From contig NIVC01000712.1 in assembly GCA_002269645.1 (NCBI GenBank), positions 452,250 to 516,249 on the forward strand: a stretch of 64,000 nt of DNA, in the 5' to 3' direction. Both the position numbers and the translations under genes were made by a program. Source of the stretch: Macrostomum lignano (lineage: Eukaryota). The notes beneath the pieces were generated by a model. It ran no database searches. It had not been told where the DNA came from and was given only the letters and a program-made list of their open reading frames with translations. Numbering within the stretch: position 1 is the first letter of the stretch; every line of letters begins with the position of its first letter. Below, in pieces: positions 1 to 62,102 of this stretch.

Positions 1-1521
1 GCAGCATCTCCAGTTCCACTGGCTTTGGCTCGCTTGTTGAAGGCGACGAGCAAGTGGCTGGAAATGCATTGGGATTTTTATTAGCAGGGTGAGAATGAAA
101 GCATTTGGCCGGTTTTATTAAGTACCAGCTAGCATGGGTCAAAAACTACTGACTGCTTGTTTACGGTAATGGTTAGAACTGGAAATCGAAACCAATATCA
201 CCTGTATGACAGCAAGTTTAACGGTGCTCAAAGCAGCTTACAGTCCGAAGCCTTCGAGTGCAGTTCGTATCGCATCGGTTGCTGCTGTGCAGCTGAATCC
301 AAAGATCTTGCCCACCTCCGCTGGCTTAAGTGCGCCTCCGTGTCAAAGCCAGTCAGAACCACAACGGCATTGTCAAGATGGTCAGTCAGAATCTTCCATT
401 TGCAGTTGAGTCCTTCCTCAGGCACAGGGTCCGCGTCAGCTTTCGGAATGATTCGATCCTCAATGAACTCGAGTTTTTTGCTGAGCTGGAACTCATTGGT
501 GATGCCACGCGGATAGCAGTACTCGTTGCCTGCAAGAGCTCTGTGGAGAAGAAGAATGAGGAGGAGTATATTTTTTTGTAAATGGACAGTTAAAAGTTGT
601 CGGAAGGCTCAGCTCACTTAAAATTTGGTCTCTTAAACGTTATTTTCTGAGCTATTATTGGCAAAATGGGTTGTTGATTATGCGACTAATTGGCTTTTCG
701 GCCGGTATTTCAGTTATTTCTTGCATACAGATCTGTTAAATAATATTTTATATTTTACGAGTAATAATATATAGAATGTATGATCACAACATACTATTAT
801 TATTAGCTACGCCCATGAACATGAAGAAATGCCATCGATTTTGTGACAACATTCTAGCTGAAATCAATACGATAAAATAGTTATGTACTTACTATCCTAC
901 TGATTGTAAAAAGACAAGAAAATCTTGTGTGAAAAACAAGTGCTGTTTAACCCACAGAACTGTTCTGCGGTTTAACCAGCTACAGTTGTTCAATGGTATA
1001 ATTCAATTAACTTTCGTACAATAATGTACGACATTAACAGCGCCAGCCTCGCAAGGACAAGTCCCCAAATAACAGCCCCACCAAGGGGCAGTCCCCAAAA
1101 AAGACAGCACCAAAAAGGACAGTGCCCCAAGCAGTATGACACCCCAATCATTATGATGACCCAATCAGTATGATGACCCAATCAGTATGATGACCCAATC
1201 AGTATGATGAGCCAATCAGTATGATGAGCCAATCAGTATGATGACCCAATCAGTATGATGACCCAATCAGTATGATGACCCAATCAGTATGACGCCCCAA
1301 TCAGTGACGCCCCAATCAGTGACGCCCCAATCAGTATGACGCACCCAAAGTGTGGCATCCAAAAGCATTTAAACCACACCAATCAAAAACTTAAATCCGC
1401 TACAGAAATCCCCGCTGGTGCAAGAAATTAAGCTTCGCATGACTCACATTTGAAATGTGGCAGACAGCAGCAGAAGAGTCGACAGTCTTCTGCCTATCAC
1501 AATCTGCAAATTCAGTCGCAT
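1..1521 (-). CDS. Receptor gene copy A (partial; continues off the left edge): exon 1 1521-1448, exon 2 540-242, exon 3 from 57
   Basis: ATG at 1521; exon 1 encodes MRLNLQIVIGRRLSTLLLLSATFQ and ends at GTGAGT (phase 2). Exon 2 lies between CACAG and GTAAGC (299 nt) and translates identically to copy B exon 2 in the ORF track. Exon 3 acceptor is TTTCCAG. Confidence 0.85.
1134..1345. repeat. 17-bp minisatellite (GATGACCCAATCAGTAT)n, about 12 units, intron 1 of copy A
   Basis: Directly visible tandem units with 15-bp variants (GACGCCCCAATCAGT). Confidence 0.97.
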
Positions 1522-2259
1522 GTCGCTCACTTCCGGCACCTAAAATTCGCGATGAGATGTGGGTGCAGCATGGAGTTTCTGTGTCTGCGCCAGCTTTTAC
1601 ACGTAAGACGTGAAACTGCTAAACAAAGATATTCGTAAATTGCATCAAACTTCTTGTACGCGTACTATACGAAATTTCTAATTTAGCAATCTGATTTCTG
1701 TTTTAGTACCCGGATGTAGTGACACATTTCTTGGCTTTTAGCTCGTGCTCGTAGTTTATCCAACCCTGCTGCCAAGAAATTTTAGATGCAAAATCGTGTA
1801 GATTTAGTTTTTATTTGATTTTATATACAATGAAGCATCTGGCGAGCCAGACTCAGCCTTTGCTCTGACTTACCTGAGCATACGAGCGTAATTGCATGTA
1901 TATTTGAGTGGCTCTAAAGACCTCAATAGCTATAATACTATACATGTGTTGCAGATTTAGTCATCTTTTCAGATTGAATTTAAAAATAATTTAGCAGTAG
2001 AAGTACAATACACACACAACCCCAAAGGACTCGCGAACGAGAATGTCTGTTAATCGAACGATGGTAGAAAATTCTGTGGTAACACAAAATATTTTGTTAA
2101 CGATTCTAACTATTTTGCTTCCTATCTTTCCTTAAACAAATATCATTTGACAAAAGAGGACACTTTAACATGGCCATCAAATTATGCTCAAATTTCTTAA
2201 AAACTATGGTAACTAAATGTGCACGAAACTCAACTCACTGTCCATGTGGACTCACTCAC

Positions 2260-5736: not shown

Positions 5737-6557
5737 TACGAGCGTACATATGTGTACTATTATTCCACACTTACTTCACGCTACTGCAAAGATAAGGAGG
5801 CGTGGATGGACAATAAACGTAACATGACAGGTCCGGTGATGAAATTTGTACATGGGCTAAGTGTACATTGGGGAGCTACTGAGGAACAATGGGCATATTT
5901 TGCAAATGTGTCTGGGTAAAAGTATTCTGGACAGAAGCTCGTGCAGCCTTTATGACTTCTGCCATTGCTAGAATTAAGAAAGAAATAAATCTAAATATAC
6001 TAAATCTCTAAGGTTTGTATGCTTGAATGAATGAATGTCCATAACGCTCTAGAGACTGCAATCCATATACTAAAAATGAATTAATTCTAAAAAATAGAAA
6101 TATTTCCGATATTTGCAGAGATTTACAGCATTTAAACAGCAGAACAGTAACAGCATAATTATACAGTCATCACTCGCATGTAACAGCATATTTCTCATTC
6201 CATCCTCTTATAGTTTCAATGAAGAGCTTTGAGGCTGCGAACTATTATTCTTACGATTAGTAAAGCTTAGTTAACACCAACAACTAAAACACAAAATCTT
6301 CAAACCTGACATCTGCTCGATGAAGCCGATGAGGAAGTGAAACTGGATTTTGAGTAATCAGACTCCATAATTATGGATCGTTTTGTCTCTTTTGCAAGCG
6401 CGGCTATTGGCTGATCAGATAGAGTTGACTGGCGAGACGAAATGCCAGCTCATAGTCTTTCAAGCCGTTCTGTGCGCGCTGTAGTCTTGGTCAGATTGCC
6501 GAAAAGGTGATGGGTGTTGCGTCACTCCGTCCACATTAGGGAATTCAGCTGCGACGT

Positions 6558-6914
6558 CTAAGGCGCAGCCCCGTTACGATAAAGAAGTTTTTCAGAGCCG
6601 GATTGGCGGACCTCCCCAACCTTTCCTCCATTTTGCGAATTTGCCGCTTTATATTGGCTGAGCTGCCGTCTCAGTAAAATTAGCTTTGAAGTAGAGATAA
6701 ATGCCAATAGAGTTGCAGCAGCAGCCAGGAGTAGAACCAAAATCAGCCTCAACCTTAAAGGATTGGCACTTGTTTGTTCTTCTTCCGTAGCCGGCTGGGC
6801 AGCCGCAAGCATCCAGCTGAGCACAGGTTGGCTCCAGTCTCCGCATCTGTTTCCGGCCGCATCCGGGAAGCTGATCAGAGCCGGAAGCTGCTCACTGCAG
6901 TCCGTGAATCTCAC
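6558..6914 (-). pseudogene. Orphan, 5'-truncated exon 5 (stalk, TM and tail) of the receptor family
   Basis: Translation FTDCSEQLPALISFPDAAGNRCG..WMLAAAQP..TM matches exon 5; homology stops at ~6910, where the GCGAGCTAAAAGTACT spacer block begins. Confidence 0.85.
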
Positions 6915-8482: not shown

Positions 8483-11400
8483 CTAAATGAGAGCTGGTAG
8501 GCTTTCAAGCTGTTTTATGTGCGTGCTGTAGCCAGAATGAACCAGAGGTTTTTGGGCGTCGGATTGGCAGGCCCCCTCAGGCCCTCCTCCCTTTTCAACG
8601 GGGCTTGGGACCGTCTTTGGCGAAGCTGCTGCTTCACGTTGAAGGCATTGCCGTCGACTCACAAAAATTAGCGTTAAAGTAGAGAGAAATAACAATAGAA
8701 TCAAACCAGCAGCCACAAATTGAACCATAATCAGCCTCATCCGTTCAGGACTGGGACTTGTTTGCTCTTCTTCCGCAGCCGGCTGGGCAGCCGCAAGCAT
8801 CCAGTTGAGCACAGGTTGGCTCGAGTCTCCGCATCTGTTTCTGGCCGCATCCGGGAAGCTGATCAGAGCCGGAAGCTGCTCACTGCAGTCCGTAAAGCTC
8901 ACCAGCCCGAGTACCTCACCATCAATGTTAAGATTGACAGCTCTGAGTGAACCACAGGAAACTGAGGAGTTCGTACTCTGGACGGTATGGTTTCTGGAAT
9001 TAAAGTGTAAAGAGTTGTGAAATTTGATTTAATTAGCCAGCCAATTGTTCCGACAGCAGATAAACTGTTATTCTCAAGTTAAGAAACTCACAGCTTATCA
9101 GCATCCTCGAACTCAGCCATTTTGCAGCCTTCTGCCCCGCAGTTCAGGTAGAAGACTTTCTTGGTCCTGTGCTCATAGAACAGTCCGATGCGAAGCCTCT
9201 GTGCAAGACTCAGCGGCTCCTTGCTGCGGGTGCTCAGGCCGGAGCCGACGCGAGTTCGCTGGCCTGAAGCCGGTGTTCAAGGGGAGTGAAATTGTGCAAA
9301 AGTTAAGGTGTGCGGTCTACAACCCAAGGTAAACAGCGATGTTCAGTAAAGGACACTGCATGCGTTCAATAAGCTGGCGCTGAAAACCATTTCTAAGTTA
9401 CTGCAGGCGAGGAATTTACATCTCTCGTGCGTACTGCTCCTATTGTGGGTTTTGCGGCGGTTTAACATAACGGCTTTGTCGGCCTGAAACTTGTGAATAT
9501 TATTCGATAATAATATGAAAACTATCGATGTAAAAGTAAGTGCAGGACAACTTTATGTTTCTGATTATGGCGCTATCTGGTATCATGGGTTATATTATTG
9601 ATGCTGTGTGAAGCATGCATATTGCAAAAATAATGTAACTTAGGCCATAGGAGCTTGGGGTATGAGATGCAACAGCAAATAAAACGAAGGTTTGTAACTT
9701 GAAAACTTTATTGAAATAAGAGCGTATTTGGAAATGCAGTTTTTAATTTGCATTAATTATTATTAATTAATTTGAAAATTCGCCAATTAATTCGGCTTAA
9801 ATTACCTACAGAGTGTGATTAAACCTTTTAATCACTGTCTTGTTTATGATTGGTAATCTGGTGAAAAATGTTTTTTTCAGTGGCGAAAAGGAGCATTTTT
9901 GAGCAATTGTTCAAATTTGATGCATACGCTCGTACACCGCAGCACAATTATCAAGGCAAAACTTCTGGCTACGCATGCATTCTTTCTTTACCTGCGCTGT
10001 TACGTTGTAATAAGCTTTAAATATTGATTTAGTACTGACATGGCGGGTACAAGACCTGAATTTACCAGTTTTCTTGACCCGAAATGTTACTGTACTCTAA
10101 AATTTGGTGATAGACTTCAAGTTGATTCAATGCAAGCTGCACGCCACAGACATTAACCGTAGGAATACCTCAGGGAATTTCTCAGTTAAAATTTCTCAGG
10201 GAAAGGCTCATTTGCACTCATTCTCAGGAGCCATTAAATTCAATAGCTGATGTGCAATGGAATATAGAATTTTACTTCATTTGATTGCAATTTAGATAAG
10301 CTTTTGTAGTGTAATTTAAGGTGCTATTTCTAAGATGGCTTTGTTTTTATCCCTAATCCATTCCTGACATGCATGTAGTATATTGAGGGAAGTTCACTAA
10401 CACAGCAGCACTCAGCCCTGTTTTAAGATATATAGTCTTCATGCACTAGTAATTCGTACATTATTGTTTCATTTCGCTAAGTGTTTGTAAAGCCACCGGC
10501 TCACTCCAGCTTACTCTCTTTGACGAAGTTCTGCAGAGCCGCGGAGCTGTTGAAGCTGGCGAGCCTCATGACTCCGCTGTCAGCGCTCATCGCAGCCAGC
10601 TCAGCAGTCAGGTTCCGACGAACCGATCCTGTGGTGTAGCAGTTGCTCTCAAAATTTGTAATGTTTCTGCAGCAGAATCCCGGCTCCATCAGCCGAATTT
10701 GTAGACCCGGGATATTCGCTGAGCTTCTCCGATTCAGCCGGAATGAGACCATCAGGTAGCTCCTACAGTTTTTATGTAGAGTGCAGTGGTTGAGTTCAAT
10801 TACAGAATTATAGATTTCAGAGAATTGGCCAGCTCTATCGTACCCTTTGGTCAGTTGCAGCACGCGCAGCATCTCCAGCTCCACTGGCTTTGGCTCGCTT
10901 GTTGAAGGCGACGAGCAAGTGGCTGGAAATGCATTGGGATTTTTATTAGCAGGGTGAGAATGAAAGCATTTGGCCGGTTTTATTAAGTACCAGCTAGCAT
11001 GGGTCAAAAACTACTGACTGCTTGTTTACGGTAATGGTTAGAACTGGAAATCGAAACCAATATCACCTGTATGACAGCAAGTTTAACGGTGCTCAAAGCA
11101 GCTTACAGTCCGAAGCCTTCGAGTGCAGTTCGTATCGCATCGGTTGCTGCTGTGCAGCTGAATCCAAAGATCTTGCCCACCTCCGCTGGCTTAAGTGCGC
11201 CTCCGTGTCAAAGCCAGTCAGAACCACAACGGCATTGTCAAGATGGTCAGTCAGAATCTTCCATTTGCAGTTGAGTCCTTCCTCAGGCACAGGGTCCGCG
11301 TCAGCTTTCGGAATGATTCGATCCTCAATGAACTCGAGTTTTTTGCTGAGCTGGAACTCATTGGTGATGCCACGCGGATAGCAGTACTCGTTGCCTGCAA

Positions 11401-13401
11401 GAGCTCTGTGGATAAGAAGAATGAGGAGGAGTAGATTTTTTGTAAATGGACAGTGAAAAGTTGTCGGAAGGCTCAGCTCACTTAAAATTTGGTCTCTTTA
11501 ACGTTATTTTCTGAGCTATTATTGGCAAAATGGGTTGTTGATTATGCGACTAATTGGCTTTTCGGCCGGTATTTCAGTTATTTCTCGCATACCAACCTGT
11601 TAAATAATATTTTATATTCTACGAGTAATAATATACAGAATGTATGATCACAACATACTATTATTATTAGCTACGCCCATGAACATGAAGAAATGTCATC
11701 GATTTTGTGACAACATTCTAGCTGAAATCAATACGATAAAATAGTTGTGTACTTACTATCCTACTGATAGTAAAAAGACAAAAAACTTGTGTGAAAAACA
11801 AGTGCTGTTTAACCCACCGAACTGTTCTGCGGTTTAACCAGCTACAGTTGTTCAATGGTATAATTCAATTAACTTTCGTACAATAATGTACGACATTAAC
11901 AGCGCCAGCCTCGCAAGGACAAGTCCCCAAATAACAGCCCCACCAAGGGGCAGTCCCCAAAAAAGACAGCACCAAAAAGGACAGTGCCCCAAGCAGTATG
12001 ACACCCCAATCAGTATGATGACCCAATCATTATGATGACCCAATCAGTATGATGACCCAATAAGTATGATGACCCAATCATTATGATGACCCAATCAGTA
12101 TGATGACCCAATCATTATGATGACCCAATCAGTATGATAACCCAATCAGTATGATGACCCAATCAGTATGATGACCCAATCAGTATGATGACCCAATCAG
12201 TATGATGACCCAATCAGTATGATGACCCAATCAGTATGATGACCCAATCAGTATGATGACCCAATCAGTATGATGACCCAATCAGTATGATGACCCAATC
12301 AGCATGATGACCCAATCAGTATGATGACCCAATCAGTATGATGACCCAATCAGTATGATGACCCAATCAGTATGATGACCCAATCAGTATGATGACCCAA
12401 TCAGTATGATGACCCAATCAGCATGATGACCCAATCAGCATGATGACCCAATCAGTATGATGACCCAATCAGTATGATGACCCAATCAGCATGATGACCC
12501 AATCAGTATGATGACCCAATCAGTATGATGACCCAATCAGTATGATGACCCAATCATTATGATGACCCAATCAGTATGATGACCCAATCAGTATGATGAC
12601 CCAATCAGTATGATGACCCAATCAGTATGATGACCCAATCAGTATGATGACCCAATCAGCATGATGACCCAATCAGCATGATGACCCAATCAGTATGATG
12701 ACCCAATCAGTATGATGACCCAATCAGCATGATGACCCAATCAGTATGATGACCCAATCAGCATGATGACCCAATCAGTATGATGACCCAATCAGTATGA
12801 TGACCCAATCAGTATGATGACCCAATCAGTATGATGACCCAATCAGTATGATGACCAAATCAGTGACGCCCAAATCAGTATGATGACCCAATCAGTATGA
12901 TGACCCAATCGGTATGATGACCCAATCAGTTACGCCCCAATCAGTGACGCCCCAATCAGTGACGCCCCAATCAGTGACGCCCCAATCAGTATGATGACCC
13001 AATCAGTATGATGACCCAATCAGTATGATGACCCAATCAGTATGATGACCCAATCAGTATGATGACCCAATCAGTGACACCCCAATCAGTATGATGACCC
13101 AATCAGTGACACCCCAATCAGTATGATGACCCAATCAGTGACACCCCAATCAGTATGATGACCCAATCAGTGACACCCCAATCAGTATGATGACCAAATC
13201 AGTGACGCCCCAATCAGTATGACGCACCCAAAGTGTGGCATCCAAAAGCATCTAATCACACCAATCAAAACCTGAAATCCGCTAGAAATCCCCGCTGGTG
13301 CAAGAAATTAAGCTTCGCATCACTCACATTTGAAGTGCAGAAGACAGCAGCAGAAGAGTCGCCAGGCTTCTGTCTATCACAATCTGCAAATTCAGCCGCA
13401 T
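8483..13401 (-). CDS. Receptor gene copy B, intact, 487 aa (signal peptide / CUB-like / CTLD-like / TM); exons 13401-13328, 11405-11107, 10922-10515, 9263-9092, 8993-8483
   Basis: All four introns are GT-AG with matching phases (2,1,1,2); 74+299+408+172+511=1464 nt in one open frame. Signal peptide ends ALA|GNE. CUB-like motifs LNCKWKIL..VVLTGFDTE and SYLMVSFR..PGLQIRL; CTLD-like motifs FCCRNITNFESNCY, RLASFNS, LRIGL, SCGSL, TDCSEQ; TM LIMVQFVAAGLILLLFLSTLTLIFV followed by SRR. The stop position assumes no further 3' splice. Confidence 0.88.
11996..13226. repeat. 17-bp minisatellite (GATGACCCAATCAGTAT)n, about 70 units, intron 1 of copy B
   Basis: Directly visible; same site as 1134-1345. 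Confidence 0.98.
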
Positions 13402-14914
13402 GTCGCTCACTTCCGGCACCTAAAATTCGCGATGAGAGGTGGGTGCAGCATGGATTTTCTGTGTCTGCGCCAGCATTTACACGTAAGACGTGAAACTGCT
13501 GAACAATGATATTCGTAAATTGCATCAAACTTCTTGTACGCGTACTATACGAAATTTCTAATTTAGCAATCTGATTTCTGTTTTAGTACCCGGACGTAGT
13601 GACACATTTCTTGGCTTTTAGCTCGTGCTCGTAGTTTACTCAACCCTGCTGTCAAGGAATTTTAGATGCAAAATCGTGTAGATTTAGTTTTTATTTGATT
13701 TTATATGTAATGAAGCATCTGGCGAGCCAGACTCAGCCTTTGCTCTGACTTACCTGAGCATACGAGCGTAATTGCATGTATATTTGAGTGGCTCTAATGA
13801 CCTCAATAGCTATAATACTATACATGTGTTGCAGATTTAGTCATCTTTTCAGATTGAATTTAAAAATAATTTAGCAGTAGAAGTACAATACACACACAAC
13901 CCCAAAGGACTCGCGAACGAGAATGTCTGTTAATCGAACGATGGTAGAAAATTCTGTGGTAACACAAAATATTTTGTTAACGATTCTAACTATTTTGCTT
14001 CCTATCTTTCCTTAAACAAATATCATTTGACAAAAGAGGACACTTTAACATGGCCATCAAATTATGCTCAAATTTCTTAAAAACTATGGTAACTAAATGT
14101 GCACGAAACTCAACTCACTGTCCATGTGGACTCACTCACCAAGAGATGTTGGCCAACTCCAGCTTCCTGCAGACTTTATGCAAGAAAATTTAAGAAGGGA
14201 GCACCACGGAAAACGCATGATTTTACAGGCGAAGCCGCGGTAACTCTGTGGCAGATCCAAGTAAAATCCAAGTAAAAACCCACGGCTTTTCCGCGGCGAA
14301 TGTTTCTCTTAAAGCAGTTGGAATTTGCCCCTCCTTTCAAGTACAACTAAAAGGCAATTCCATGGCTCTCCCATGGAAATTCAGTCAGTAGAATTGTTTA
14401 AATAGGGTTGGAGTGTGGGTGTATGCGTGCGCACAGTTGCCGCCCTATTGTACGAGTACGTAGCATGCCAGGAAAGAGAGACAGAAGAGATCTGTATCGT
14501 TCATGCGCTTTCAGACCAAGCATGCACTGTTCTCTGTACGCCGCCTAACGCTGTACGTTCGTACAAAAAAGAAAACTTCAATTTTTCTGTGAACTTAAGA
14601 GTTCTTTATTTATTGTTCAAAGCTCAAGGCCCAAAGGCAAAGCAGTTAACTGCAGGGAATGATTACAAGCATGTGACATACGTAGGGTCTGGTGGATGTC
14701 ACTGTCGTCAAAAGTTAAGAGACTAAAATTTTCTTTAGGGTTTCACAAGGGTCTTCAGAATGTGTTTATGAATTCTTCTTTTAGTTCAGTTCAACAACTG
14801 CGAGCAGTGCGAGCTTACGAGCTAAAAGTACTGAGGTGCAGAAACAGCATGAGTATTAGTTTCTTCGCTCTCATTTTTTTTCTGGTGGAAAACTTTAGCT
14901 AGAACTTTAGGGTA

Positions 14915-15455
14915 TGTTTCACATTCCCCAGAGTTCACATTCCCCAGATTTCACATTCCCCAGAGTTCACATTCCCCAGAGTTCACATTCCCCAGAGTTC
15001 ACATTCCCCAGATTTCACATTCCCCAGAGTTCACATTCCCCAGAGTTCACATTCCCCAGAGTTCACATTCCCCAGATTTTACATTCCCCAGAGTTCACAT
15101 TCCCCAGAGTTTACATTCCCCAGAGTTCACATTCACCAGAATTCCCATTTCCCAGATTTTGCATAACCAGTTTTCACATTCCCCAGATTTCAAATTCCGC
15201 AGATTTCAAATTTCCCAGATCAAATTCCGCAGATTTCACATTCCCCAGATTTCACATTCCGCAGATTTCAAATTCCGCAGATTTCACATTCCCCAGATTT
15301 CACATTCCCCCAGTGTTCACATTCACCAGAATTCCCATTCCCCAGATTTTGCATCAACAGATTTCACATTTCCCAGATTTAACATTCCTTGCATTTCACA
15401 CTCACCATATTTCACATTCCCAAGATTTTACGTTCCCAAAATTTTACATTCCCCA
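14915..15455. repeat. 16-bp TTCACATTCCCCAGA minisatellite (copy B flank)
   Basis: Duplicate of 3035-3575. Confidence 0.95.
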
Positions 15456-17450
15456 TATTTCTCCGGCGTCGCAATAAACAACAATACAGCAGCACAGGGC
15501 GCGCCTCTGGGTCAGGTCGCAAAGGAGGGCCACGTCGACGACTGAATCCAGGGCGCAGGCGTCAGACAGCAGGCAGGAGACAAGGCGCGAACCCGCGATA
15601 CGCGGCCTGCCTGCCTGCTTGTGCCAGCTGGACGCCACCCTCACCCATGTACGTAGGAAAAACCCAGAGCTATTTTTAGCAACACATCTATAGAGAGCCA
15701 TCTGCATGTGCAAGTACAAGGGATTCTCTGGCCTGTGCGGAACGCTCCTTGATTTTTAAACGTTATTAACAGGTTTTTTCCCTATTATCTTCTGCTTCCA
15801 TGGCAGAAAGACTTCAAACACACCGGCCTCTAAGGCCCTATTATGAGTGCGAGGCTCACAGCTCAGAATTCGCAGTAATGAACACTTCAAGGCAGTGTAT
15901 CTTATAATCAACTAAAACTAATCAACTAATGAATAGTTTGAGCGGGGTAGGGTTAGCGCTCACGCAGTTTCTCTCTGTGCTGTTTTTATGGCAATTATCA
16001 ACCCCCGCCTCTCAACACATTTTGCTGCGAGTCTTCTGTGTCACGCGTTCGCAGGCTGCTGGCTTGGCCCTCAAATCTCAGATTCGTTATTGTCATTTGG
16101 GCATTGAGATCGGCTTTCATAAGCTGGTCTGTTTGAATAGGTTTGATCAAGATGAGTAGAGGTTGTTGTTTTTTCCACTTCGATGCAAGCGCTTTTCCGG
16201 TGCTTACAGACAGGTATTAAAAGAATGAAAGAAACTGCAAATGATAACACGAACAAGTTTTGTAACTTAGATACTTACTGAATGTTATCTTACTTTTTAT
16301 TTTCTTTCTTTCTAATCTCTTTCCACTTTCTTACTAATCTCTTCTTTGATTAAAAAGATCAGGAGCGTGGCCACGGAAGGGCCAAAGGGCGATCCGACCC
16401 TCCAAATAGGCTGGCAAAGCTAATGGCTGAGTACCTACTGACTTGGCGCCTCTTCAGCAGGTTTGGCGCTTCTTTTCCCAATTCTAGCAGTTCCCCCGAC
16501 CACCACTTTGGCTACTTTGGCCCCAACAACAGCCCTTGGTGCTGGCGCCCCTTGGTGCTGACGCCCATTGGCCCAAAAGTACCGGGGTGATAACGGAATG
16601 CTTGAGATACCAGCTGAGGATGTCCAGCAGCTTGCCTACTGGATCTCGCTTGATCATCGAAACTAGATAAATTTGCAACAGCGTGTCTATAGTCACCTGG
16701 TGCCACCTGTGGAAGGTCCAGAAGCTCCGCCTGGGTGAAGCCTAGTGACCAACGAATGCAGAGCTGATGCAGACACATGTGGTCGACGTGCTGATGAAAT
16801 TTGGAGACTTGGCAAGGCTGCACTGAGGCGAAGTGCTGATTGGCGCTCAGGGGTGTACTGAATACACTGGCGCTTATGGAAAAAATCAGACCTTCTGGCA
16901 GAATCGTCGAATATCTCGACAGTCTGGAGGGCTTGTGTTAGCCCGTGTTGTTGAATTTCGTATGTCTGCGTTGCTCCAGTACGGCGCAGCAAAAAAATGT
17001 CAGGAGGATACCCCCCTCTGGGTAGTTATACTGTTAATTAAGTTCTCGGATTTTTTATCGTTACTTAATTATATTTTCTTCCTCGTTATTGTTTTATTTC
17101 CTCTTACAAATGTTTGATCCAGGGATTACATTTTCGATTGCCTTCTTTCTAGATTACGAGTAGTCTTGAAAGCAGCTCTCTGACTACCTTGATCATCGAT
17201 CACTTAATCAGAGTGCATAATTCTTGAATAACTGGATTCTTCAAGTGACATCTTAATCAATTTTGCCTGTTACTGGTAAAATTTAATTTGTAATTCCAAT
17301 ATACGCTTGCAAATTGATACACTTTTATTACAAAAGTTAATAAATGGTTAGGATACAATAATAGGTTAGTACGTAAATGTGGCTTCGTTCTGAAATTCTC
17401 AATGCGTTCGATTATCGGGCCACTACTTCGTATTAACTTAGTTACGAGCG

Positions 17451-18480: not shown

Positions 18481-18501
18481 CTATGGTACGTTTGGTACTT
18501 T

Positions 18502-48365: not shown

Positions 48366-50064
48366 CTTTACAGAGGATTTGGAGATGATTTGGAAGATGG
48401 GATTCAAGTCATGGAGTTTCAGCTGATGGATTTCAGGGAATGGAATTCCGGTGATGGGAGTTCTTCCCCTTTCTCCTCCGGAGGAGGAGTTCCACTCGTA
48501 TCGTCTAAATGTTAAAAAGGTGGCATCATTCCAATAATCCCGAAAAGAAATGACACACCCAAAGTACCCGTTTGTTTGTAAAACGTTAGTGCTCGTTGTG
48601 GGACGATGTAGTCGAAAGCGTTGCGCCTGTAGGCTACCTTAGAAGAATGCAATTAGCAGCTGTAAACAATAGGACAATTATGATATTAGCCGTATGAATA
48701 AAATGAGCAAAAACTCATGAGCAAGGGCTCAGGAGGTCGAGGTTGAGTGAATTCTCACTTTATTCATATGGCCATTGTACATGTACTCGTATGACACTCC
48801 GAATTAATAAAATGAATTTAGCAACCACTGCCTTCATTTGAGATGCTTCAATCACTGCGTCACAACTTAAGTAGAATAGGTTTTTTGAAATATGACGGAG
48901 CTTATATTTATGCAAAAAACCAGTCGATCATTTCCATCAGCTTTTCAATCTTACAGCTAGATGTAAAATGAGACATGAAATCTGGCTGGCTTCGAGAACG
49001 CAGCTATTTCTCTTTGATTACCTTCATCAACGGTCACTTAAAATAAAGTTATCAGGTTGCTTAACTTCTAGATTTATTTACGTTGAACTCTCTGATTACC
49101 TCAGCCATCGATCACGTAGCCATCTGATTGCTTGATTCCAGAATTACTTCATTTTTTGCAGAAGTCTCCTGGATGCCTGTACGCTAGTGTAAAGCAGTCT
49201 ACCATTATTCCACACTTATTTCACGGTAGTGCAAAGATAGTGACGGGTAGATAAGATAACCCACGTGACAAAACACTCACTCCTGGATTAAATTTGCACA
49301 TAGGGTGAATGCACAATTAAGAGAAACCGTGAATTAATGGACTTAAGTACTTGTCACTGGGCCTGGGAGAGAGTATGAAATTCTGATCGGGCAACACTGT
49401 GCCCTCCAGAAGCTCAGACAGCCGTCTCTATGTAACAAGGATGTAAATGAATTCTAAATAATATAACTGAAATGTGCAGAAAGACTATATATGAAATAGA
49501 CATTTCAATGTCCGATATTTGATGTGATTTCCGTATTTATGCTACAGAAGCAGCATATTTATGCAGTAATTGTACCCAACAACAATGTAAGATCCACCCA
49601 CTAAGCAAATATATTTTATTCACCTTGTACAGGTGAAACTTTTTACTCTTCTTGATTATACTCGCGTATTTAGCAGCATATTTCTCTCTCTATACTCGGA
49701 TTCAAATGAGAGTTTTAAGGCAGCCGACTCGCATTCTTAATAAAGCCGTTTAAGAGGCAATTATAAAATATTGTACTTATATTTTATATATCAGGTAGTT
49801 AACAACAGCAGCAACAATCCCGGGTGCGGTGTCTGTTGGATCATCCGATGAGGAATTGAAACTGGATTTCGAGCAATCAGACTCCATATAGCTATGGTTA
49901 ATTTGGTCGCAGTTGCTAGCTCTGCTATTGGCTGTTCAGACTGAGATGATTAGAGAGACAAAAAGCGAGTTCGAAGGCTTTCAAGCTGTTTGATGTGTGC
50001 GCGGTAGCCTTGGTCAGGTTGCCAGGGAAATGTGATGGGTGTTGCGTCACTCCGTCCACATTAG

Positions 50065-53000
50065 TCATTCAGCTGTGACGTCTAAGGCGCAGCCCCCGTT
50101 ACGAACCAGAGGTTTTTCAGAGTCGGATTGGCAGACCACCTCAGGCCCTCCTCCTCTTTTGAACGGGCTTGCGCCCGGATTTGGCGAAATTGCGGCTATA
50201 TATTGAAGGCTGTGCAGTCGTCTCATTAGCGTTAAAGTAGAGAGAACTGCCAATAGAATTGCACCAGAAACCACAAGTAGAACCAAAATCAGCCTCATCC
50301 TTTTAGGATTGGGACTTGTTTGTTCTTCTTCCGCAGCCGGATGGGCAGCCGCAAGCATCCAGCTGAGCACAGGTTGGCTCGAGTTTCCGCATCTGTTTCC
50401 GGCCGCATCCGGGAAGCTGATCAGAGCCGAAAGCTGCTCACTGCAATCCGTGAAGCTCACCAGCCCGAGTACCTCACCATCAATGGTAAGATTGACAGCT
50501 CTGAGTGAACCACAGGAGACTGAGGAGTTCGTACTCTGGACGGTATGGTTTCTGGAATCCAAATGTCAAGAGTTGTGAAATTTGATTTAATAAGCCAGCC
50601 TATTGTTCTGACAGCAGATAAACTGCTATTCTCAAGTTCAAGAAACTCACAGCTTATCAGCATCCTCGAACTCAGCTATTTTGCAGTCTTCTGCCCCGCA
50701 GTTCAGGTAGAAGACCTTCTTGGTCCTGTGCTCATAGAACAGTCCGATGCGAAGCCTCTGTGCGAGATTTAGCGGCTCCTTGCTGCGGGTGCTCAGGCCG
50801 GAGCCGACGCGAGTTCGCTGGCCTGAAGCCGGTGTTCAAGTGGAGTGAAATTGTGCAAGAGTTAAGCTGTGCTGCCTACAGCTAAAACTGATGTGCATTT
50901 ATTGCTTAACAATGATATTGTTCATGTTAGTCCTCACTACTGCGAGTAAGATTAGCTCATGAGAGTAGCCATGCGATATTTTATGGCAGATCCTGCCTCT
51001 ACTGTGTTTAATTTTCACTAGTCTAAAAAGCCACCGGTTCACTCCAGCTTACTCTCTGTAACGAAGTTCTTCAGAGTCGTGGAGCTGTTGAAGCTGGCGA
51101 GCCTCATGACTCCGCTGTCAGCCCTCATCGCAGCCGCCAGCTCAGCAGTCAGGTTCCGACGAACCGATCCTTTGGTGTAGCAGTTGCTCTCAAAATTAGT
51201 CATGCTTCTGCCGCAGAATCCCGGCTCCATCAGCCGAATATGTAGACCCGGAATATTCACTGAGCTTCTCCGATTCAGCCGGAATGAGACAGTCAGGAAG
51301 CTCCTACAGTTTGATGTAATGTATTGTGATTGAATTTTAAGTAAGAAATTGATTTAATAAAATTGTGTCCAGCATCGGGCCAGCTCTATCGTACCCTTTC
51401 GTCAGTTGCAGCACGCGAAGCATCTCCAGCTCCACGGGCTTTGGCTCGCTTGTTGAAGGCGACGAGCAAGTCGCTGGAAATGCATTGGGGTTCGCATTGC
51501 CAGGGTAAGAATCGAAGTGTTTGACTGGTTTTATCGAGTTCCAGCTGGCAGTTAGCAGCGTGGGTAAAAACCCACTGACTGCTTGTTCACAGATGCCATT
51601 CGACAACTGCTTACTTTAATAATAATAATATAATAATTGATTACACCTGCCCAATGGGCAGATGTGCAACCGACAGCTCAGCCGCAGCTATTGCGCGGCG
51701 CGTCTGAAGGCTGCGTACGGCTGTTCAGTCCAAAGACTGCGGGTTCGACACACACCCTCACTTATCCCAGCTAATGCTGGCACCCATTTTACAGCTGGGT
51801 GAACTGAAGCAATGCAGAGTAAAGTGTCTTGCTCAAGGACACAAATTGTTCCAGTGGGATCGGGAATCGAAACTGCGACCTTCACGTTGTGCGTCCGACG
51901 CTCTAACCACTAGGCTACAACCTCTAGACCATTACAACTGCCTTGAGTCAGCTATACTAGGCATTTATGCAAAGGCGTGAAGTTTGATTTCATAATCACT
52001 ATTATTATCAACTCTCTTTTCGTTGGCGACCAGACGGCTAAAATTGATGCTCTAAAGGCCTGCTGTCTTCTTCAACAATTAACATTATTGCACAGCTTAT
52101 AGAATATTCTCTAATTGTGATCAAAGCGCTGCTTACCGTCCGAAGCCTTCGAGTGCAGTTCGTATCGCATCGGTTGTTGCTGTGCAGCTGAATCCACAGA
52201 TTTTGTCCGCCTCCACTCGTTTACGCGAGCCTCCGTGTCAAAGCCAGTCAGAACCACAACGGAATTGTCAAGGTGGTCAGTCAGAATCTTCCATTTGCAG
52301 TTGAGCCCTTCCTCAGGCACAGGGTCCGCGTCAGCTTTGGGAATGATTCGATCTTCAATGAACTCGAGTTTTTTGCTGAGCTGGAACTCATTGGTGTTGC
52401 CACGCGGATAGCAGTACTGGTTGCCTGCCAGAGCTCTAAAGAAAAAAGGGCGGGAAAGTAGATTTATTGTAAATGGACACTCAAAAGTTACTGGAAGGCC
52501 CACTTAAGATTTGGTCTACTAAAAACGTTATTTTCTGAGCTATTATTGGCAAAATGTGTTGTTGATTATATGATTAATTGACTTTTCGGTCGGTACTTCA
52601 GTTATTTCTCCCATACCGACCTGTAAAAAGAAAACGTTTTATATTTTAATAATGTATAGAATGTATAGTAATATATTATTATCATTAGCTATGCTCTATA
52701 CGCATGTACGTGTAGAAATGCCATCGATTTTGGGGCAACATTCTAGCGGAATTCAATACGATAAAATGGGTGAGTATCTACTTACCATCCTACTGATAAG
52801 TAGAAAGACAAGAAAATATCGCGTGTAGAACAAGTTCTGTTTATCCAGCTACAGCACTATGATATAATCCAATTAACTTTCGTACATTAATGTACATTGA
52901 CAGCGCAAGCCTCGCAAGGACAGGTCCCCAAAGAACAATCCCACAGCGGGCAGCCCCACAAAGGACAGCCCCAATTAGTATGGCGCCCCCAGAGTAGCAT

Positions 53001-53161
53001 CCCAAAACATTCTGCCTACCTTTAAGCAAATGTTAATCCGCAAAAAAATCCCAGTTGGTTTAATGAATGAAGCGTCGCATCACTCACATTTGAAATGTGG
53101 CAGACAGCAGCAGAAGAGTCGCCAGGCTTCTGCCCATCACTATCTGCAGATTCAGTCGCAT
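50065..53161 (-). pseudogene. Receptor gene copy D, probable pseudogene; exons 53161-53088, 52435-52137, 51473-51053, 50822-50651, 50551-50065
   Basis: Splice sites are intact, but exon 3 is 421 nt with a frameshift and an in-frame TAA (~51337) in a diverged patch; intron 3 is only 230 bp. Confidence 0.82.
51615..51923 (-). mobile_element. tRNA-derived SINE in intron 2 of copy D (duplicate of 25961-26270)
   Basis: Same A/B boxes, core and tail at the same intronic site. Confidence 0.85.
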
Positions 53162-57827: not shown

Positions 57828-58478
57828 TTTTCATGACAAAACGTAAATTTCGCAAAAGGGTTACAGTTAAAATGGTTAGATTAGTAGGTACAATAATTTT
57901 GTTAAAATAATTTTGCAGGCTTTGAATTTACCTACTAATACTATTAATACCCAAAATTGTCCATGCGCTCGTTTTTTCACCACTGTTTAATTCAGCAACA
58001 AACCAAGCAGTCAATCCTTATTGCACACATCTTTCGCGTTAGTGCAGTGAAAACATCAGATGTGTGGAGGATAGGTAAAGTAGTAAATGAATTATAAACA
58101 AATGAAATATTTATAATATTTACAGCGATTACCGCATTTATAAAGCAGAAAAATTGTTGCATATTAGTGACAGCATAAGTGTACAGTGATCACTCGCATA
58201 TAACAGCTAGCGAACTTCTCACTCAATCCTCGTAGTTCATTCTTAGTAAAGCTGCTAACACTTAGTTAACACCAGCAACAAAATCATAAAATATTGTCTG
58301 TTGAATCTTCAAACCAGTCATTTACCGGATGCATCCGATGAGGAAGTGAAACTGGATTTCGAGCAAACAGACTCCATAACTATTAATGATTTTGTCTCTT
58401 TTGCAAGCGCGGATATTGGCTGATCAAAGCGAGATGATTGGCGTGACTAAATGAGAGCTGGTAGGCTTTCAAGCTGTT

Positions 58479-61400
58479 TTATGTGCGTGCTGTAGCCAGA
58501 ATGAACCAGAGGTTTTTGGGCGTCGGATTGGCAGGCCCCCTCAGGCCCTCCTCCTTTTCAACGGGGCCTGGGACCGTCTTTGGCGAAGCTGCTGCTTCAC
58601 GTTGAAGGCATTGCAGTCGACTCACAAAAATTAGCGTTAAAGTAGAGAGAAATAACAATAGAATCAAACCAGCAGCCACAAGTTGAACGACAATCAGCCT
58701 CATCCGTTCAGGACTGGGACTTGTTTGCTCTTCTTCCGCAGCCGGCTGGGCAGCCGCAAGCATCCAGTTGAGCACAGGTTGGATCGAGTCTCCGCATCTG
58801 TTTCTGGCCGCATCCGGGAAGCTGATCAGAGCCGGAAGCTGCTCACTGCAGTCCGTAAAGCTCACCAGCCCGAGTACCTCACCATCAATGGTAAGATTGA
58901 CAGCTCTGAGTGAACCACAGGAAACTGAGGAGTTCGTACTCTGGACGGTATGGTTTCTGGAATTAAAGTGTAAATAGTTGTGAAATTTGATTTAATTAGC
59001 CAGCCAATTGTTCCGACAGCAGATAAACTGCTATTCTCAAGTTAAGAAACTCACAGCTTATCAGCATCCTCGAACTCAGCTATTTTGCAGTCTTCTGCCC
59101 CGCAGTTCAGGTAGAAGACCTTCTTGGTCCTGTGCTCATAGAACAGTCCGATGCGAAGCCTCTGTGCAAGACTCAGCGGCTCCTTGCTGCGGGTGCTCAG
59201 GCCGGAGCCGACGCGAGTTCGCTGGCCTGAAGCCGGTGTTCAAGTGGAGTGAAATTGTGCAAAAGTTAAGGTGTGCGGTCTACAACCCAAGGTAAACAGC
59301 GATGTTCAGTAAAGGACACTGCATGCGTTCAATAAGCTGGCAATGAAAACCATTTCTAAGTTACTGCAGGCGAGGAATTTACATCTCTCGTGCGTACTGC
59401 TCCTATTGTGGGTTTTGCGGCGGTTTAACATAACGGCTTTGTCGGCCTGAAACTTGTGAATATTATTCGATAATAATATGAAAACTATCGATATAAAAGT
59501 AAGTGCAGGACAACTTTATGTTTCTGATTATAGCGCTATCTGGTATCATGGGCCATATTATTGATGCTGTGTGAAGCATGCATATTGCAAAAATTATGTA
59601 GCTTAGGCCATAGGAGCTTGGGGTATGAGATGCAACAGCAAATAAAACGAAGCAGGTTTGTAACTTGAAAACTTTATTGAAATACGAGCGAATTTGGAAA
59701 TGCAGTTTTTAATTTGCATTAATTATTATTAATTAATTTGAAAATTCGCCAATTAATTCGGCTTAAATTACCTACAGAGTGTGATTAAACCTTTTAATCA
59801 TTGTCTTGATTATGATTGGCAATCTGGTGAAAAATGTTTTTTTTCAGTGGCGAAAATGAGCATTTTTGAGCAATTGTTCAAATTTGATGCATACGCTCGT
59901 ACACCGCAGCACAATTATCAAGGCAAAACTTCTGGCAACGCATGCATTCTTTCTTTACCTGCGCTGTTACGTTGTAATAAGCTTTAAATATTGATTTGGT
60001 ACTGACATGGCGGGTACAAGACCTGAATTTACCAGTTTTCTTGACCCGAAATGTTACTGTACTCTAAAATTTGGTGATAGACTTCAAGTTGATTCAATGC
60101 AAGCTGCACGCCACAGACATTAACCGTAGGAATACCTCAGGGAATTTCTCAGTTAAAATTTCTCAGGGAAAGGCTCATTTGCACTCATTCTCAGGAGCCA
60201 TTAAATTCAATGCTAATGTGCAATGGAATATAGAATTTTACTTCATTTGATTGCAATTTAATAAGCTTTTGTAGTGTAATTTAAGGTGCTATTTCTAAGA
60301 TGGCTTTGTTTTTATCCCTAATCCATTCCTGACATGCATGTAGTATATTGAGGGAAGTTCACTAACACAGCAGCACTCAGCCCTGTTTTAAGATATATAG
60401 TCTTCATGTACTAGTAATTCGTACATTATTGTTTCATTTCGCTAAGTGTTTTAAAGCCACCGGTTCACTCCAGCTTACTCTCTTGACGAAGTTCTGCAGA
60501 GCCGCGGAGCTGTTGAAGCTGGCGAGCCTCATGACTCCGCTGTCAGCGCTCATCGCAGCGAGCTCAGCAGTCAGGGACCGACGAACCGATCCAGTGGTGT
60601 AGCAGCTGCTCTCAAAATTAGTCACATTTCTGCCGCAGAATCCCGGCTCCATCAGCCGAATTCTCAGAGTCGGGATATTCGCTGAGCTTTTCCGATTCAG
60701 CCGGAATGAGACCGTCAGGTAGCTCCTACAGTTTTTATGTAGAGTGCAGTGGTTGAGTTCAATTACAGAATTATAGATCTCAGAGAATTGGCCAGCTCTA
60801 TCGTACCCTTTGGTCAGTTGCAGCACGCGCAGCATCTCCAGTTCCACTGGCTTTGGCTCGCTTGTTGAAGGCGACGAGCAAGTGGCTGGAAATGCATTGG
60901 GATTTTTATTAGCAGGGTGAGAATGAAAGCATTTGCTGTTTTTATTAAGTACCAGCTAGCATGGGTCAAAAACTACTGACTGCTTGTTTACGGTAATGGT
61001 TAGAACTGGAAATCGAAACCAATACTACATGTACGAGTATAATAGCAAGTTTAACTGTGCTCAAAGTTCTGCTTACAGTCCGAAGCCTTCGAGTGCAGTT
61101 CGTATCGCATCGGTTGCTGTGCAGCTGAATCTACAGATCTTGCCCACCTCCGCTTGCTTTGGTGAGGCGCCGTGTCAAAGCCAGTCAGAACCACAACGGC
61201 TTTGTCAAGGTGGTCAGTCAGAATCTTCCATTTGCAGTTGAGCCCTTCCTCAGGCACAGGGTCCGCGTCAGTTTTAGGGATGATTCGATCCTCAATGAAC
61301 TCGAGTTTTTTGCTGAGCTGGAACTCATTGATGTTGCCACGCGGATAGCAGTACCGGTTGCCAGCGAGAACTCTGGGAGAAGAATAGAAAAGTAGCTTTG

Positions 61401-62102
61401 CTGTTGTAAAATAGATATTGTAGTTTAAAACTACGGAAGGGTCACTCCCCTTTGTTAAAAAATCGGACTTGTTAGGATATTGTGGGAGAATTGTTTCAAT
61501 GAGGTAATTTATTGGTTCGTCGGTTCAGTTATTAATCGCACACTGACCAGAAACCAATAAATATCTGTACTCTACGCATTGGAGTAAGGACGCGCGATCG
61601 ATTTAGCGATAAAATTAATATTTTTACCAATTTCAAAACGATAAAGAGATGAGTTCTTACTGTCCTACTGATAGTAGAAACACAAGAAATGGCGTGCAAA
61701 AAGACTTGCTGTTTTGCAGCTACAGTATTAAGATATAGGCCTAATCAAATTAAAATTCATACACTGCAAGCACCATTCTCGTTAAGGACAGCCCTCCAAA
61801 GAACTGTGCAGCAAGGACAGCCTCACAAAGGACAGCCTCCAAACGAACGAACGACTGCGCTCCAACAGTATGACACCCCACCAATCAGTATTATGCCCCA
61901 AGCATGGCGCCCCCATGCAGTGTGACATCCAAAAGCATTCAACCCACCCTAAGCAAAAAACCTGATTCCGCTCAGAAATCCCAGTTGTGGCTAATTTGGT
62001 GCAAGAAATTAAGCTGCGCATCACTCACAGTTGCAGTGCAGCAGACAGCAGCAGAAGAGTCGCCAGGCTTCTGCCAATCGCTATCTGCAGATTCAGTCGC
62101 AT
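58479..62102 (-). CDS. Receptor gene copy E (two 1-bp deletions; pseudogene or sequencing error); exons 62102-62029, 61372-61077, 60885-60479, 59226-59055, 58956-58479
   Basis: Splice sites conserved. Exon 3 is 407 nt versus 408 in B (TT versus TTT at ~60482), and one base is missing in the tail (~58553). Exons 3-5 and intron 3 are very close to copy B. Confidence 0.75.

What the first reader, a model, noticed from the sequence alone, without database searches (positions are those of the whole stretch)
1..62102. Tandem array of an unnamed, diversifying CUB-like / C-type-lectin-like single-pass receptor family
No single ORF in the track shows this gene. Joining minus-strand fragments at conserved GT-AG sites gives ~487-aa proteins with signal peptide, CUB-like region, CTLD-like region, stalk, TM and tail (seen in sequence). 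At least 7 present or former copies lie within 62 kb (A-E plus two exon-5 remnants). Clustered, fast-evolving CUB/CTLD surface receptors are the usual layout of invertebrate immune-recognition, allorecognition or gamete-recognition loci (established knowledge). That this locus has such a role is inference.
Basis: partly seen in the sequence, partly recalled or inferred. Interest (0 to 1): 0.82.

Follow-up and report, generated by a model that had tools for sequence, protein, structure and literature searches.

The report
Flatworm-specific lectin-like receptor gene array
The window is the end of a published Macrostomum lignano (flatworm) contig and carries five tandem copies, plus two fragments, of a flatworm-specific membrane protein with a CUB-like and a C-type-lectin-like domain; the genes are real and conserved, their function is unknown, and their outer domains show no overall sign of diversifying selection.

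Summary
Five minus-strand copies start at ATGs 1521 (A, cut by the window start), 13401 (B), 27507 (C), 53161 (D) and 62102 (E). Last-exon remnants lie at 6537-6914 and 18260-18479.

The gene model needs one correction. There are six coding exons, not five. The proteins are 453-460 aa; 487 aa results from retaining an 81-93 nt intron.

The window is the last 64 kb of GenBank NIVC01000712.1 (M. lignano Mlig_3_7). Part of the array already has RNA-seq-derived 'hypothetical protein' models, two of which join exons of neighbouring copies.

The C-type-lectin-like domain (CTLD) is well supported: the family profile hits only CTLDs in the PDB (best E 8.7e-6), and the AlphaFold model matches NK-receptor-type CTLDs at TM 0.65-0.73. 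It lacks the EPN/QPD and WND sugar/calcium motifs. The CUB call rests only on fold similarity and a C...CxW motif. Pfam finds neither domain.

Homologues were found only in M. lignano (29 clusters at 50% identity).

The ectodomain is under purifying selection (pN/pS 0.37-0.56). Only one disordered loop and the TM/tail vary freely. An immune, allorecognition or gamete role is untested.

Verdict: a real, lineage-restricted, uncharacterised receptor family of moderate interest.

The parts
1..1521 (-). Gene copy A (5' part only; the rest lies before the window start)
   Evidence: Exon 1 is 1521-1448, exon 2 is 540-242, and exon 3 starts at 57 and is cut at position 1. The first 124 codons are intact. 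A and its upstream region are 97-98% identical to B and its upstream region (1-1348 = 10866-12213; 1123-6004 = 13012-17892).
6537..6914 (-). Last-exon remnant 1: end of the CTLD, stalk, TM and tail, with no upstream exons
   Evidence: tblastn with P0004 residues 322-456 at 57% identity. It is an open 118-aa ORF at 6558-6914. At DNA level it is 81% identical to D's last exon.
8483..13401 (-). Gene copy B, intact, 460 aa
   Evidence: Exons 13401-13328, 11405-11107, 10922-10844, 10762-10515, 9263-9092 and 8993-8483 (stop included); all introns GT-AG. Intron 1 holds a 17-bp tandem repeat at 11988-13231. Exons 5-6 are the 3' half of deposited model P0004, and exons 1-4 are the 5' part of P0044.
18260..18479 (-). 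Last-exon remnant 2: first part of the last exon only
   Evidence: tblastn with P0006 residues 293-382 at about 50% identity. It abuts a perfect 14-bp tandem repeat at 18502-19099.
23247..27507 (-). Gene copy C, intact, 455 aa
   Evidence: Exons 27507-27434, 26781-26483, 25820-25742, 25648-25401, 24012-23838 and 23739-23247. The 5' part (25385-29729) is 97.6% identical to D, while the last two exons are only 76-86% identical to D. Deposited model P0004 uses exons 1-4 only, so C's own exons 5-6 are left unannotated.
48804..53161 (-). Gene copy D, intact. It corresponds to deposited gene BOX15_Mlig013553g3 (P0006, 454 aa).
   Evidence: Exons 53161-53088, 52435-52137, 51473-51395, 51303-51053, 50822-50651 and 50551-50065, giving 453 aa if read to the first stop. 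The deposited model splices on to a short 3' exon ending at 48804. Intron 3 is 91 nt, so retaining it would shift the frame.
58446..62102 (-). Gene copy E, with two 1-bp deletions; not called in the gene list returned for this stretch of the record
   Evidence: Exons 62102-62029, 61372-61077, 60885-60807, 60725-60479 (1 nt short), 59226-59055 and 58956-58479/58446. It is 96.4% identical to B over 57826-61384. No gene was listed here in the look-up that covered 38804-63161.

Best explanation
The locus is a tandem array of a Macrostomum-restricted gene family. Each gene encodes a type I single-pass membrane glycoprotein.

Domain order:
- cleavable signal peptide (about residues 1-28)
- membrane-distal CUB-like beta-sandwich (about 29-177), carrying an inserted disordered basic loop
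- long-form C-type-lectin-like domain (about 178-338)
- short acidic stalk
- one TM helix
- cytoplasmic tail of 40-60 aa

Shown here: the array grew by recent unequal crossing-over or segmental duplication. Blocks are 96-98% identical and have different end points, so the copies are mosaics. Two orphan last exons were left behind.

Shown here: the ectodomain is kept by purifying selection, while the TM segment and tail drift almost neutrally.

Inferred: the protein sits on the cell surface and binds a ligand through the CUB-like/CTLD pair. The CTLD lacks the calcium and sugar residues of true C-type lectins, and its best structural matches are NK-receptor-type CTLDs. The ligand is therefore more likely a protein or other non-canonical ligand than a calcium-dependent glycan. 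The short tail suggests anchoring, sorting or co-receptor use rather than enzymatic signalling.
For: - Gene structure and intact CDS.
- Identity of the record, and RNA-seq-derived models over the array. The annotation method is described in PMC5730564.
- Mosaic duplication blocks. A second array with at least three neighbouring members on NIVC01002507.1.
- CTLD by sequence profile: all 43 PDB hits are CTLDs, best CD69 at E 8.7e-6.
- AlphaFold2 with a 28-sequence family alignment: mean pLDDT 73.4, pTM 0.66, and about 90 over residues 178-340.
- Foldseek against PDB: CTLDs at TM 0.65-0.73 with probability 1.00, plus CUB-containing ectodomains.
- No EPN, QPD or WND motif in the CTLD of any member.
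- One hydrophobic TM segment and 2-6 N-glycosylation sequons per protein.
- Selection: ectodomain pN/pS 0.37-0.56, Fisher p from 2e-6 to 0.025. TM plus tail pN/pS 1.4-1.7, not different from 1.
- Lineage restriction: two profile searches found only M. lignano proteins among all named or looked-up hits.
Against: - No expression, localisation or binding data were available, so surface receptor function is inferred from architecture only.
- Pfam recognises neither domain.
- The CUB assignment is weak. hhalign gives P 0.025 over 27 columns, and isolated NRP2 CUB1 reaches only TM 0.50.
- The structural model is a prediction from a shallow, single-species alignment. A 12-sequence alignment gave only pLDDT 42.
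- The selection analysis uses only four copies, which exchange sequence by conversion.
- The deposited models over B and C are chimeric, so it is not certain which copies in this window are transcribed.
Confidence: 0.62

Rival explanations
1. One reading: a diversifying immune, allorecognition or gamete-recognition receptor cluster whose ectodomains are driven apart by positive selection.
For: The genes are tandemly clustered, lineage-restricted and much expanded: 29 clusters at 50% identity, all looked-up ones from one species. A CTLD is present. pN/pS is 2-2.9 locally at residues 81-110, and the number of N-glycosylation sequons varies between copies from 2 to 6. Copies are mosaics, as expected if conversion shuffles variants.
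Against: Ectodomain pN/pS is 0.37-0.56 and significantly below 1. The only ectodomain hot spot is a low-confidence loop (pLDDT below 50 at residues 95-110). The CTLD long-loop region, where ligands usually bind, has pN/pS of 0.2-1.0. The most variable parts are the TM and tail. No expression or polymorphism data exist, and no paper links these gene IDs to any phenotype.
Confidence: 0.15
2. Much of the array is not functional biology. It would be redundancy of a neopolyploid PacBio assembly (near-identical copies placed in tandem at a contig end) and/or decaying pseudogenes.
For: The window is the terminal 64 kb of its contig. The assembly is reported to contain 180 Mb of non-repetitive blocks that are at least 95% identical (PMC5730564). 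The A/B, B/E and C/D blocks are 96-98% identical. E has two frameshifts. The deposited models are chimeric, as expected from ambiguous mapping.
Against: The duplicated blocks have different boundaries and different intergenic content: a transposon with a target-site duplication upstream of C only, a 13-kb repeat field before D, and different tandem repeats. B and C differ by dS of about 0.19 yet both keep intact reading frames with pN below pS. Intron lengths differ between copies; intron 1 is 1922 versus 652 nt and intron 4 is 1251-1388 versus 230 nt.
Confidence: 0.1
3. Neighbouring copies are co-transcribed, and exons 1-4 of one copy are cis-spliced to exons 5-6 of the next copy downstream, producing combinatorial receptors.
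For: Two deposited RNA-seq-derived models show exactly this pattern. P0004 joins C exons 1-4 to B exons 5-6 across about 16 kb. P0044 joins B exons 1-4 to an exon 5 beyond the window start. Gene names such as Mlig013553.g3 imply multi-gene transcriptional units.
Against: Exon 5 is nearly identical between B and E. The pipeline accepted BLAT mappings at 80% identity or more. Another contig encodes P0045, whose 3' half is identical to B's. Mis-mapping of paralogous transcripts therefore explains the chimeras more simply. Each copy also has its own conserved upstream region.
Confidence: 0.05

Closest known systems
NK-receptor-type and myeloid C-type lectin-like domains (CD69, NKR-P1B, NKG2D, LOX-1, Mincle, DC-SIGN/DC-SIGNR)
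   Same: Same fold by prediction (Foldseek TM 0.65-0.73). There is a significant profile match to the N-terminal beta0-beta1-alpha1 part, 'C..W..F...CY.......A.......LA.I.S..E'. As in CD69, NKG2D and LOX-1, there is no EPN/QPD plus WND calcium/sugar site.
   Different: Those are type II membrane proteins with the CTLD at the C-terminus; this family is type I with the CTLD next to the membrane and a further domain in front. The canonical C1-C4 disulfide is missing, and WIGL is replaced by RIGLF/RLGMF. Pfam Lectin_C does not detect the domain. No homologue was found outside Macrostomum.
CUB domains of neuropilin, Gpr126/Adgrg6, Neto2 and PCPE-1
   Same: The predicted N-terminal beta-sandwich aligns to CUB-containing ectodomains. 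The invariant Cys...Cys-x-Trp lies at the position of the CUB C1-C2 'CxW' strand.
   Different: No Pfam CUB hit in 28 members. hhalign against seven validated CUB domains matches only 27 columns at P 0.025. The second CUB disulfide is absent. A disordered basic insert of about 20 residues (RxxRS) interrupts the domain in the close paralogues.
Proteins that combine CUB and CTLD modules: attractin, and the many C. elegans CLEC proteins (from general knowledge, not tested here)
   Same: They combine a CUB-type and a CTLD-type module in one extracellular protein. The nematode CLEC genes are also clustered and lineage-expanded.
   Different: Attractin is a large multi-domain protein with EGF, kelch and PSI modules between the two domains. 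To my knowledge the nematode CLECs are mostly secreted. Neither the 1.84-billion-representative profile search nor the word-indexed 5.8-billion-sequence search returned any such protein, so no homology to them is shown.
Mlig-tuf2, an M. lignano 'species-specific' intestinal gene with weak IgV and CLECT hits (PMC12732829)
   Same: Same organism. It is likewise a lineage-specific gene with a barely detectable C-type-lectin-like domain preceded by a beta-sandwich-type domain, and it has an RNAi phenotype.
   Different: Its gene IDs (Mlig020807.g2-g5) are not among the family members recovered here.

Membership tests
C-type lectin-like domain (CTLD) superfamily | CTLD fold: two helices packed on two beta-sheets, with a long-loop region | tested here: met
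   The AlphaFold2 model has pLDDT of about 90 over residues 178-340. Foldseek against PDB gives NKG2D TM 0.73, NKR-P1B 0.70, Mincle 0.70, LOX-1 0.66-0.71 and CD69 0.68, all with probability 1.00. This rests on a predicted structure, not a solved one.
C-type lectin-like domain (CTLD) superfamily | Sequence-profile similarity to known CTLDs | tested here: inconclusive
   The family profile against PDB sequences gives 43 hits, all CTLDs, best E 8.7e-6, but covering only the first 45-60 residues of the domain. Pfam Lectin_C gives no hit at E<=10 for any of 28 members.
C-type lectin-like domain (CTLD) superfamily | Conserved cysteine framework (C1-C4 and C2-C3, plus C0-C0' in long-form domains) and the WIGL motif | tested here: inconclusive
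   Read from the sequence. C181/C192 fit C0-C0', and C304/C327 fit C2-C3; both pairs are invariant among the ten sequences. The C1 and C4 positions are Met and Ser in the window copies. WIGL is RIGLF.
Classical calcium-dependent C-type lectin (carbohydrate-recognition domain) | EPN or QPD tripeptide together with the WND motif at calcium site 2 | tested here: not met
   None of these motifs occurs in the CTLD region of B, C, D or any of the 47 fetched family proteins.
CUB domain (Pfam PF00431) | Match to the CUB sequence profile | tested here: not met
   No PF00431 hit at E<=10 in spliced B, C, P0011 or P0012 or in any of 28 members. hhalign of the N-domain alignment against seven Pfam-validated CUB domains gives 27 columns, P 0.025.
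CUB domain (Pfam PF00431) | CUB beta-sandwich fold | tested here: inconclusive
   Foldseek hits to the Gpr126 ectodomain (E 3.3e-5), neuropilin a2b1b2, Neto2, PCPE-1 and isolated NRP2 CUB1 (TM 0.50, rmsd 7.4). N-domain pLDDT is only 50-87.
CUB domain (Pfam PF00431) | Two disulfides (C1-C2, C3-C4), with the CxW strand after C2 | tested here: inconclusive
   C33 and C71-x-W73 are invariant across 13 diverse members. Only one further Cys (C127) is present, so the second pair is absent.
Type I single-pass membrane receptor | N-terminal signal peptide, one TM helix and a C-terminal cytoplasmic tail | tested here: met
   There is one Kyte-Doolittle segment above 1.6 (B 375-405, C 387-416, D 374-402). 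AlphaFold2 helices span 2-26 and 373-412. The N-terminus is hydrophobic (MRLNLQIV..LATLLLLSA..ALA|G). No dedicated signal-peptide predictor was available.

The most novel reading that the evidence does not exclude
Adjacent copies in the array may be co-transcribed, with the 5' exons of one copy (CUB-like domain plus first half of the CTLD) spliced to the 3' exons of the next copy (second half of the CTLD, TM and tail). The tandem array would then produce combinatorial receptor variants used for self/non-self or mate/gamete recognition in this outcrossing hermaphrodite. The only support is that two RNA-seq-derived deposited models show this exact pattern. Mis-mapping between 96-100% identical exons is the simpler explanation.
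Probability: 0.05. Interest if true: 0.85.

Novelty: new variant of a known kind. Interest (0 to 1): 0.4.

Why it matters
If the reading is right, Macrostomum has built and repeatedly amplified its own class of surface receptor from two old extracellular modules. The modules have diverged so far that standard domain libraries miss them. This illustrates how much lineage-specific receptor biology hides among 'hypothetical proteins'.

M. lignano supports RNAi and stable transgenesis, so the family can be tested directly. Roles in the gut, epidermis, immunity or reproduction are all open.

On the practical side, the deposited annotation of this locus needs repair. Two models are chimeric, C's own 3' exons are left out of its model, and copy E and an apparently intact transposon were not listed among the called genes.

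Tried and rejected
- Pfam on single exon ORFs, on spliced B and C, on two distant paralogues and on all 28 aligned members gave no CUB or Lectin_C hit.
I used the deposited P0004 instead, whose exons are all from this window.
- The first AlphaFold2 run, with 12 close paralogues, was unusable (pLDDT 42).
- hhalign of the N-domain against validated CUB domains was not significant.
- Literature and supplement searches for twelve family gene IDs found nothing. 'Macrostomum' plus 'CUB domain' or 'C-type lectin' returned only bioadhesion papers and the unrelated-ID Mlig-tuf2.
- Rfam and tRNA scans of the window were empty.
- UniRef names were rejected as evidence. Members of this one family are variously auto-named CUB, ZP, ricin B lectin, LAM_G, fibrillar collagen NC1 or protein kinase domain-containing.
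- A transposon origin for the family was rejected. The only transposase in the window is an unrelated P-element/THAP9-like gene lying between copies.

Full report
WHERE THE WINDOW COMES FROM

A concatenation of three minus-strand ORF fragments found only Macrostomum lignano proteins. An exact look-up of two of them placed the window on GenBank NIVC01000712.1 (assembly Mlig_3_7, GCA_002269645.1, 516,249 bp). A 24-kb locus fetched from that record is 100% identical to window 38804-63161. Window coordinate x equals record coordinate x + 452249, so the window is the last 64 kb of the contig.

THE OBSERVATION

A search for the exon-1 peptide finds five start codons on the minus strand: 62102, 53161, 27507, 13401 and 1521. 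tblastn with annotated paralogues finds the same series of exon matches behind each of them. It also finds two isolated last-exon matches at 6537-6914 and 18260-18479.

A protein-guided search for GT...AG pairs gives uninterrupted coding sequences for three copies:
- B: 13401..8483, 460 aa
- C: 27507..23247, 455 aa
- D: 53161..50065, 453 aa

Donor and acceptor sequences are conserved between copies.

That intron reads GTACGA...TGTAG and is 81, 93, 91 and 81 nt long in B, C, D and E. Three facts mark it as an intron. In D it is not a multiple of three. It is absent from the distant paralogues. It is removed in the deposited models.

Copy A is cut by the window start after 124 intact codons.

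Copy E keeps all junctions but has two single-base deletions relative to B, both in short homopolymer runs. One lies six bases before the exon-4 donor and one lies in the tail. I cannot tell decay from PacBio consensus error.

WHAT IS ALREADY ANNOTATED

The GenBank annotation of this assembly was derived entirely from RNA-seq. It used StringTie/TACO, plus BLAT mapping of a de novo transcriptome at 80% identity or more (PMC5730564).

The three models over the array are as follows.
- P0006 (BOX15_Mlig013553g3) is copy D with an extra short 3' exon ending at 48804.
- P0004 (Mlig033233g1) spans 27507..8483. It joins C exons 1-4 to B exons 5-6.
- P0044 (Mlig017994g1) joins B exons 1-4 to an exon 5 beyond the window start.

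C's own last two exons are outside any model. Copy E and the transposon described below were not among the genes listed for the stretches I looked up.

WHAT THE PROTEIN IS

Pfam finds nothing at E<=10 in the spliced proteins or in any of 28 family members.

A profile of 12 paralogues, searched against 1.84 billion representatives, found 29 clusters at E<=0.001. Every one I looked up is from M. lignano. A second search with a 28-sequence profile again returned only M. lignano proteins.

The 28-sequence profile hits 43 distinct PDB sequences at E<=10. All are C-type lectin-like domains. The best is CD69 at 8.7e-6, aligned over the N-terminal hairpin, helix 1 and the following strand.

AlphaFold2 was uninformative with 12 close paralogues (pLDDT 42). 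With the 28-sequence alignment it reached mean pLDDT 73.4 and pTM 0.66, with about 90 across residues 178-340.

Foldseek against the PDB returns two kinds of match:
- NK-receptor and myeloid CTLDs at TM 0.65-0.73 and probability 1.00.
- CUB-containing ectodomains: Gpr126, neuropilin a2b1b2, Neto2, PCPE-1, and isolated NRP2 CUB1 at TM 0.50.

For the N-terminal domain the sequence evidence is thin. Cys...Cys-x-Trp is invariant across diverse members. hhalign against seven Pfam-validated CUB domains aligns only that strand, at P 0.025. I therefore call the second domain a CTLD and the first 'CUB-like, membership unproven'.

The CTLD has no EPN/QPD or WND motif in any member. It keeps the C0-C0' and C2-C3 cysteine pairs but not C1-C4.

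Each protein has one strongly hydrophobic segment and 2-6 N-glycosylation sequons.

HOW THE ARRAY EVOLVED

Self-comparison shows blocks of 96-98% identity with different end points:
- A plus its upstream region versus B plus its upstream region
- B exons 2-6 versus E exons 2-6
- C exons 1-4 plus 2.2 kb upstream versus the same part of D

The last two exons of C and D are only 76-86% identical. The copies are therefore mosaics produced by repeated unequal exchange or conversion, and the two orphan last exons are its debris.

A second array, with at least three adjacent annotated members, lies on contig NIVC01002507.1. It shares blocks of 88-97% identity with this window, including the 17-bp intron-1 repeat.

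SELECTION

Nei-Gojobori counts on B, C, D and frame-corrected E give dN/dS of 0.24-0.55 for the CUB-like and CTLD regions. They give more than 1 for the TM segment and tail.

Over the whole ectodomain pN is significantly below pS (pN/pS 0.37-0.56; Fisher p from 2e-6 to 0.025). For TM plus tail the ratio is 1.4-1.7 and does not differ from 1.

A sliding window finds one ectodomain segment above 1, at residues 81-110. This coincides with a low-confidence loop that carries a conserved R-x-x-[RK]-S motif in the nearer paralogues.

This is the pattern of a constrained binding module on a loosely constrained anchor. It is not the pattern of a recognition surface under diversifying selection. With only four recombining copies, though, site-level selection cannot be excluded.

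MECHANISM

Shown: the gene structure, the intact frames, the CTLD, the single-pass type I layout, the purifying selection, the tandem mosaic duplication and the restriction to Macrostomum.

Inferred: surface location, ligand binding through the CUB-like/CTLD pair, and a non-classical ligand that is not a calcium-dependent glycan.

Not testable here: tissue, ligand, and any immune, allorecognition or gamete role.

VERDICT

The array is already partly, and wrongly, annotated in a published genome. The CUB label is weaker than the CTLD label, and 'diversifying' is not borne out. The family is a lineage-restricted new arrangement of known modules with no known function. It is moderately interesting and readily testable in a species that supports RNAi and transgenesis.

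Noticed in passing
window 29735-33227 (minus-strand ORFs 32944..30614 and 30630..30070): An apparently complete P-element/THAP9-type DNA transposon lies upstream of copy C. It has 16-nt terminal inverted repeats (CACAGACCAATAAGTA / TACTTCTTGGTCTGTG). A perfect 8-bp target-site duplication (ATTGGCCT) flanks it. It carries an uninterrupted 776-aa ORF with THAP, HTH, RNase H-N, GTP-binding and RNase H-C domains (Pfam E from 1e-16 to 1e-37). The C/D homology block ends 5 bp before the left repeat, so the insertion looks recent. No gene was listed here in the look-up covering this stretch.
   Followed up: partly
window 27507..8483 and 13401..<1 (deposited models P0004 and P0044): Two RNA-seq-derived GenBank gene models are chimeras. 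Each joins exons 1-4 of one copy to exons 5-6 of the next copy downstream, skipping about 16 kb. This is either mis-mapping between near-identical exons or genuine inter-copy splicing.
   Followed up: partly
window 1530-1545, 13410-13425, 27516-27531, 53170-53185, 62111-62126 (minus strand): The sequence TTTTAG|GTGCCGGAAG (TTTTAG|ATGCCGGAAG in copy E) ends 8 nt before every ATG, placing the AG 18 nt upstream of it. It looks like a splice acceptor and could be an SL trans-splice site; 39% of M. lignano genes are reported to be trans-spliced. About 50 nt further upstream, copies C, D and E have a TATAAAT motif. A and B read GTAAAAG and GTAAATG at the aligned position.
   Followed up: partly
protein residues about 93-113 of B, C, D and E (exon 2; for example window 11130-11190 in B): A disordered insert in the CUB-like domain carries a conserved basic motif R-x-x-[R/K]-S (RRWKRS in some paralogues). 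It resembles a proprotein-convertase site. It is also the only ectodomain stretch with pN/pS above 1.
   Followed up: no
window 36000-49800: This is a 13-kb repeat field between the transposon and copy D. GC skew reaches +0.53. Nested repeats of 50-150 bp are present, along with two large units at 43451-45830 and 45912-48285 that are 85-93% identical. Long low-complexity serine/leucine/proline ORFs run on the minus strand. No protein family was tested here.
   Followed up: no
window 1126-1348, 11988-13231, 3037-3580, 14917-15461, 18502-19099, 20998-21748: The window holds microsatellite-like tandem arrays with periods of 14-17 bp. The 17-bp array (CCCAATCAGTATGATGA) sits in intron 1. It has 13 units in A and 74 in B, and it is also present in the second array on another contig. 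The 14-bp array is 100% perfect over 43 units.
   Followed up: no
C-terminal tails of E (window 58479-58560) versus paralogues P0003 and P0009: E's frameshifted tail ends in ...ATART. Intact paralogues on another contig end in ...TKATART and ...TKATAHT. The alternative reading frame of the tail exon therefore appears to be used elsewhere in the family.
   Followed up: no
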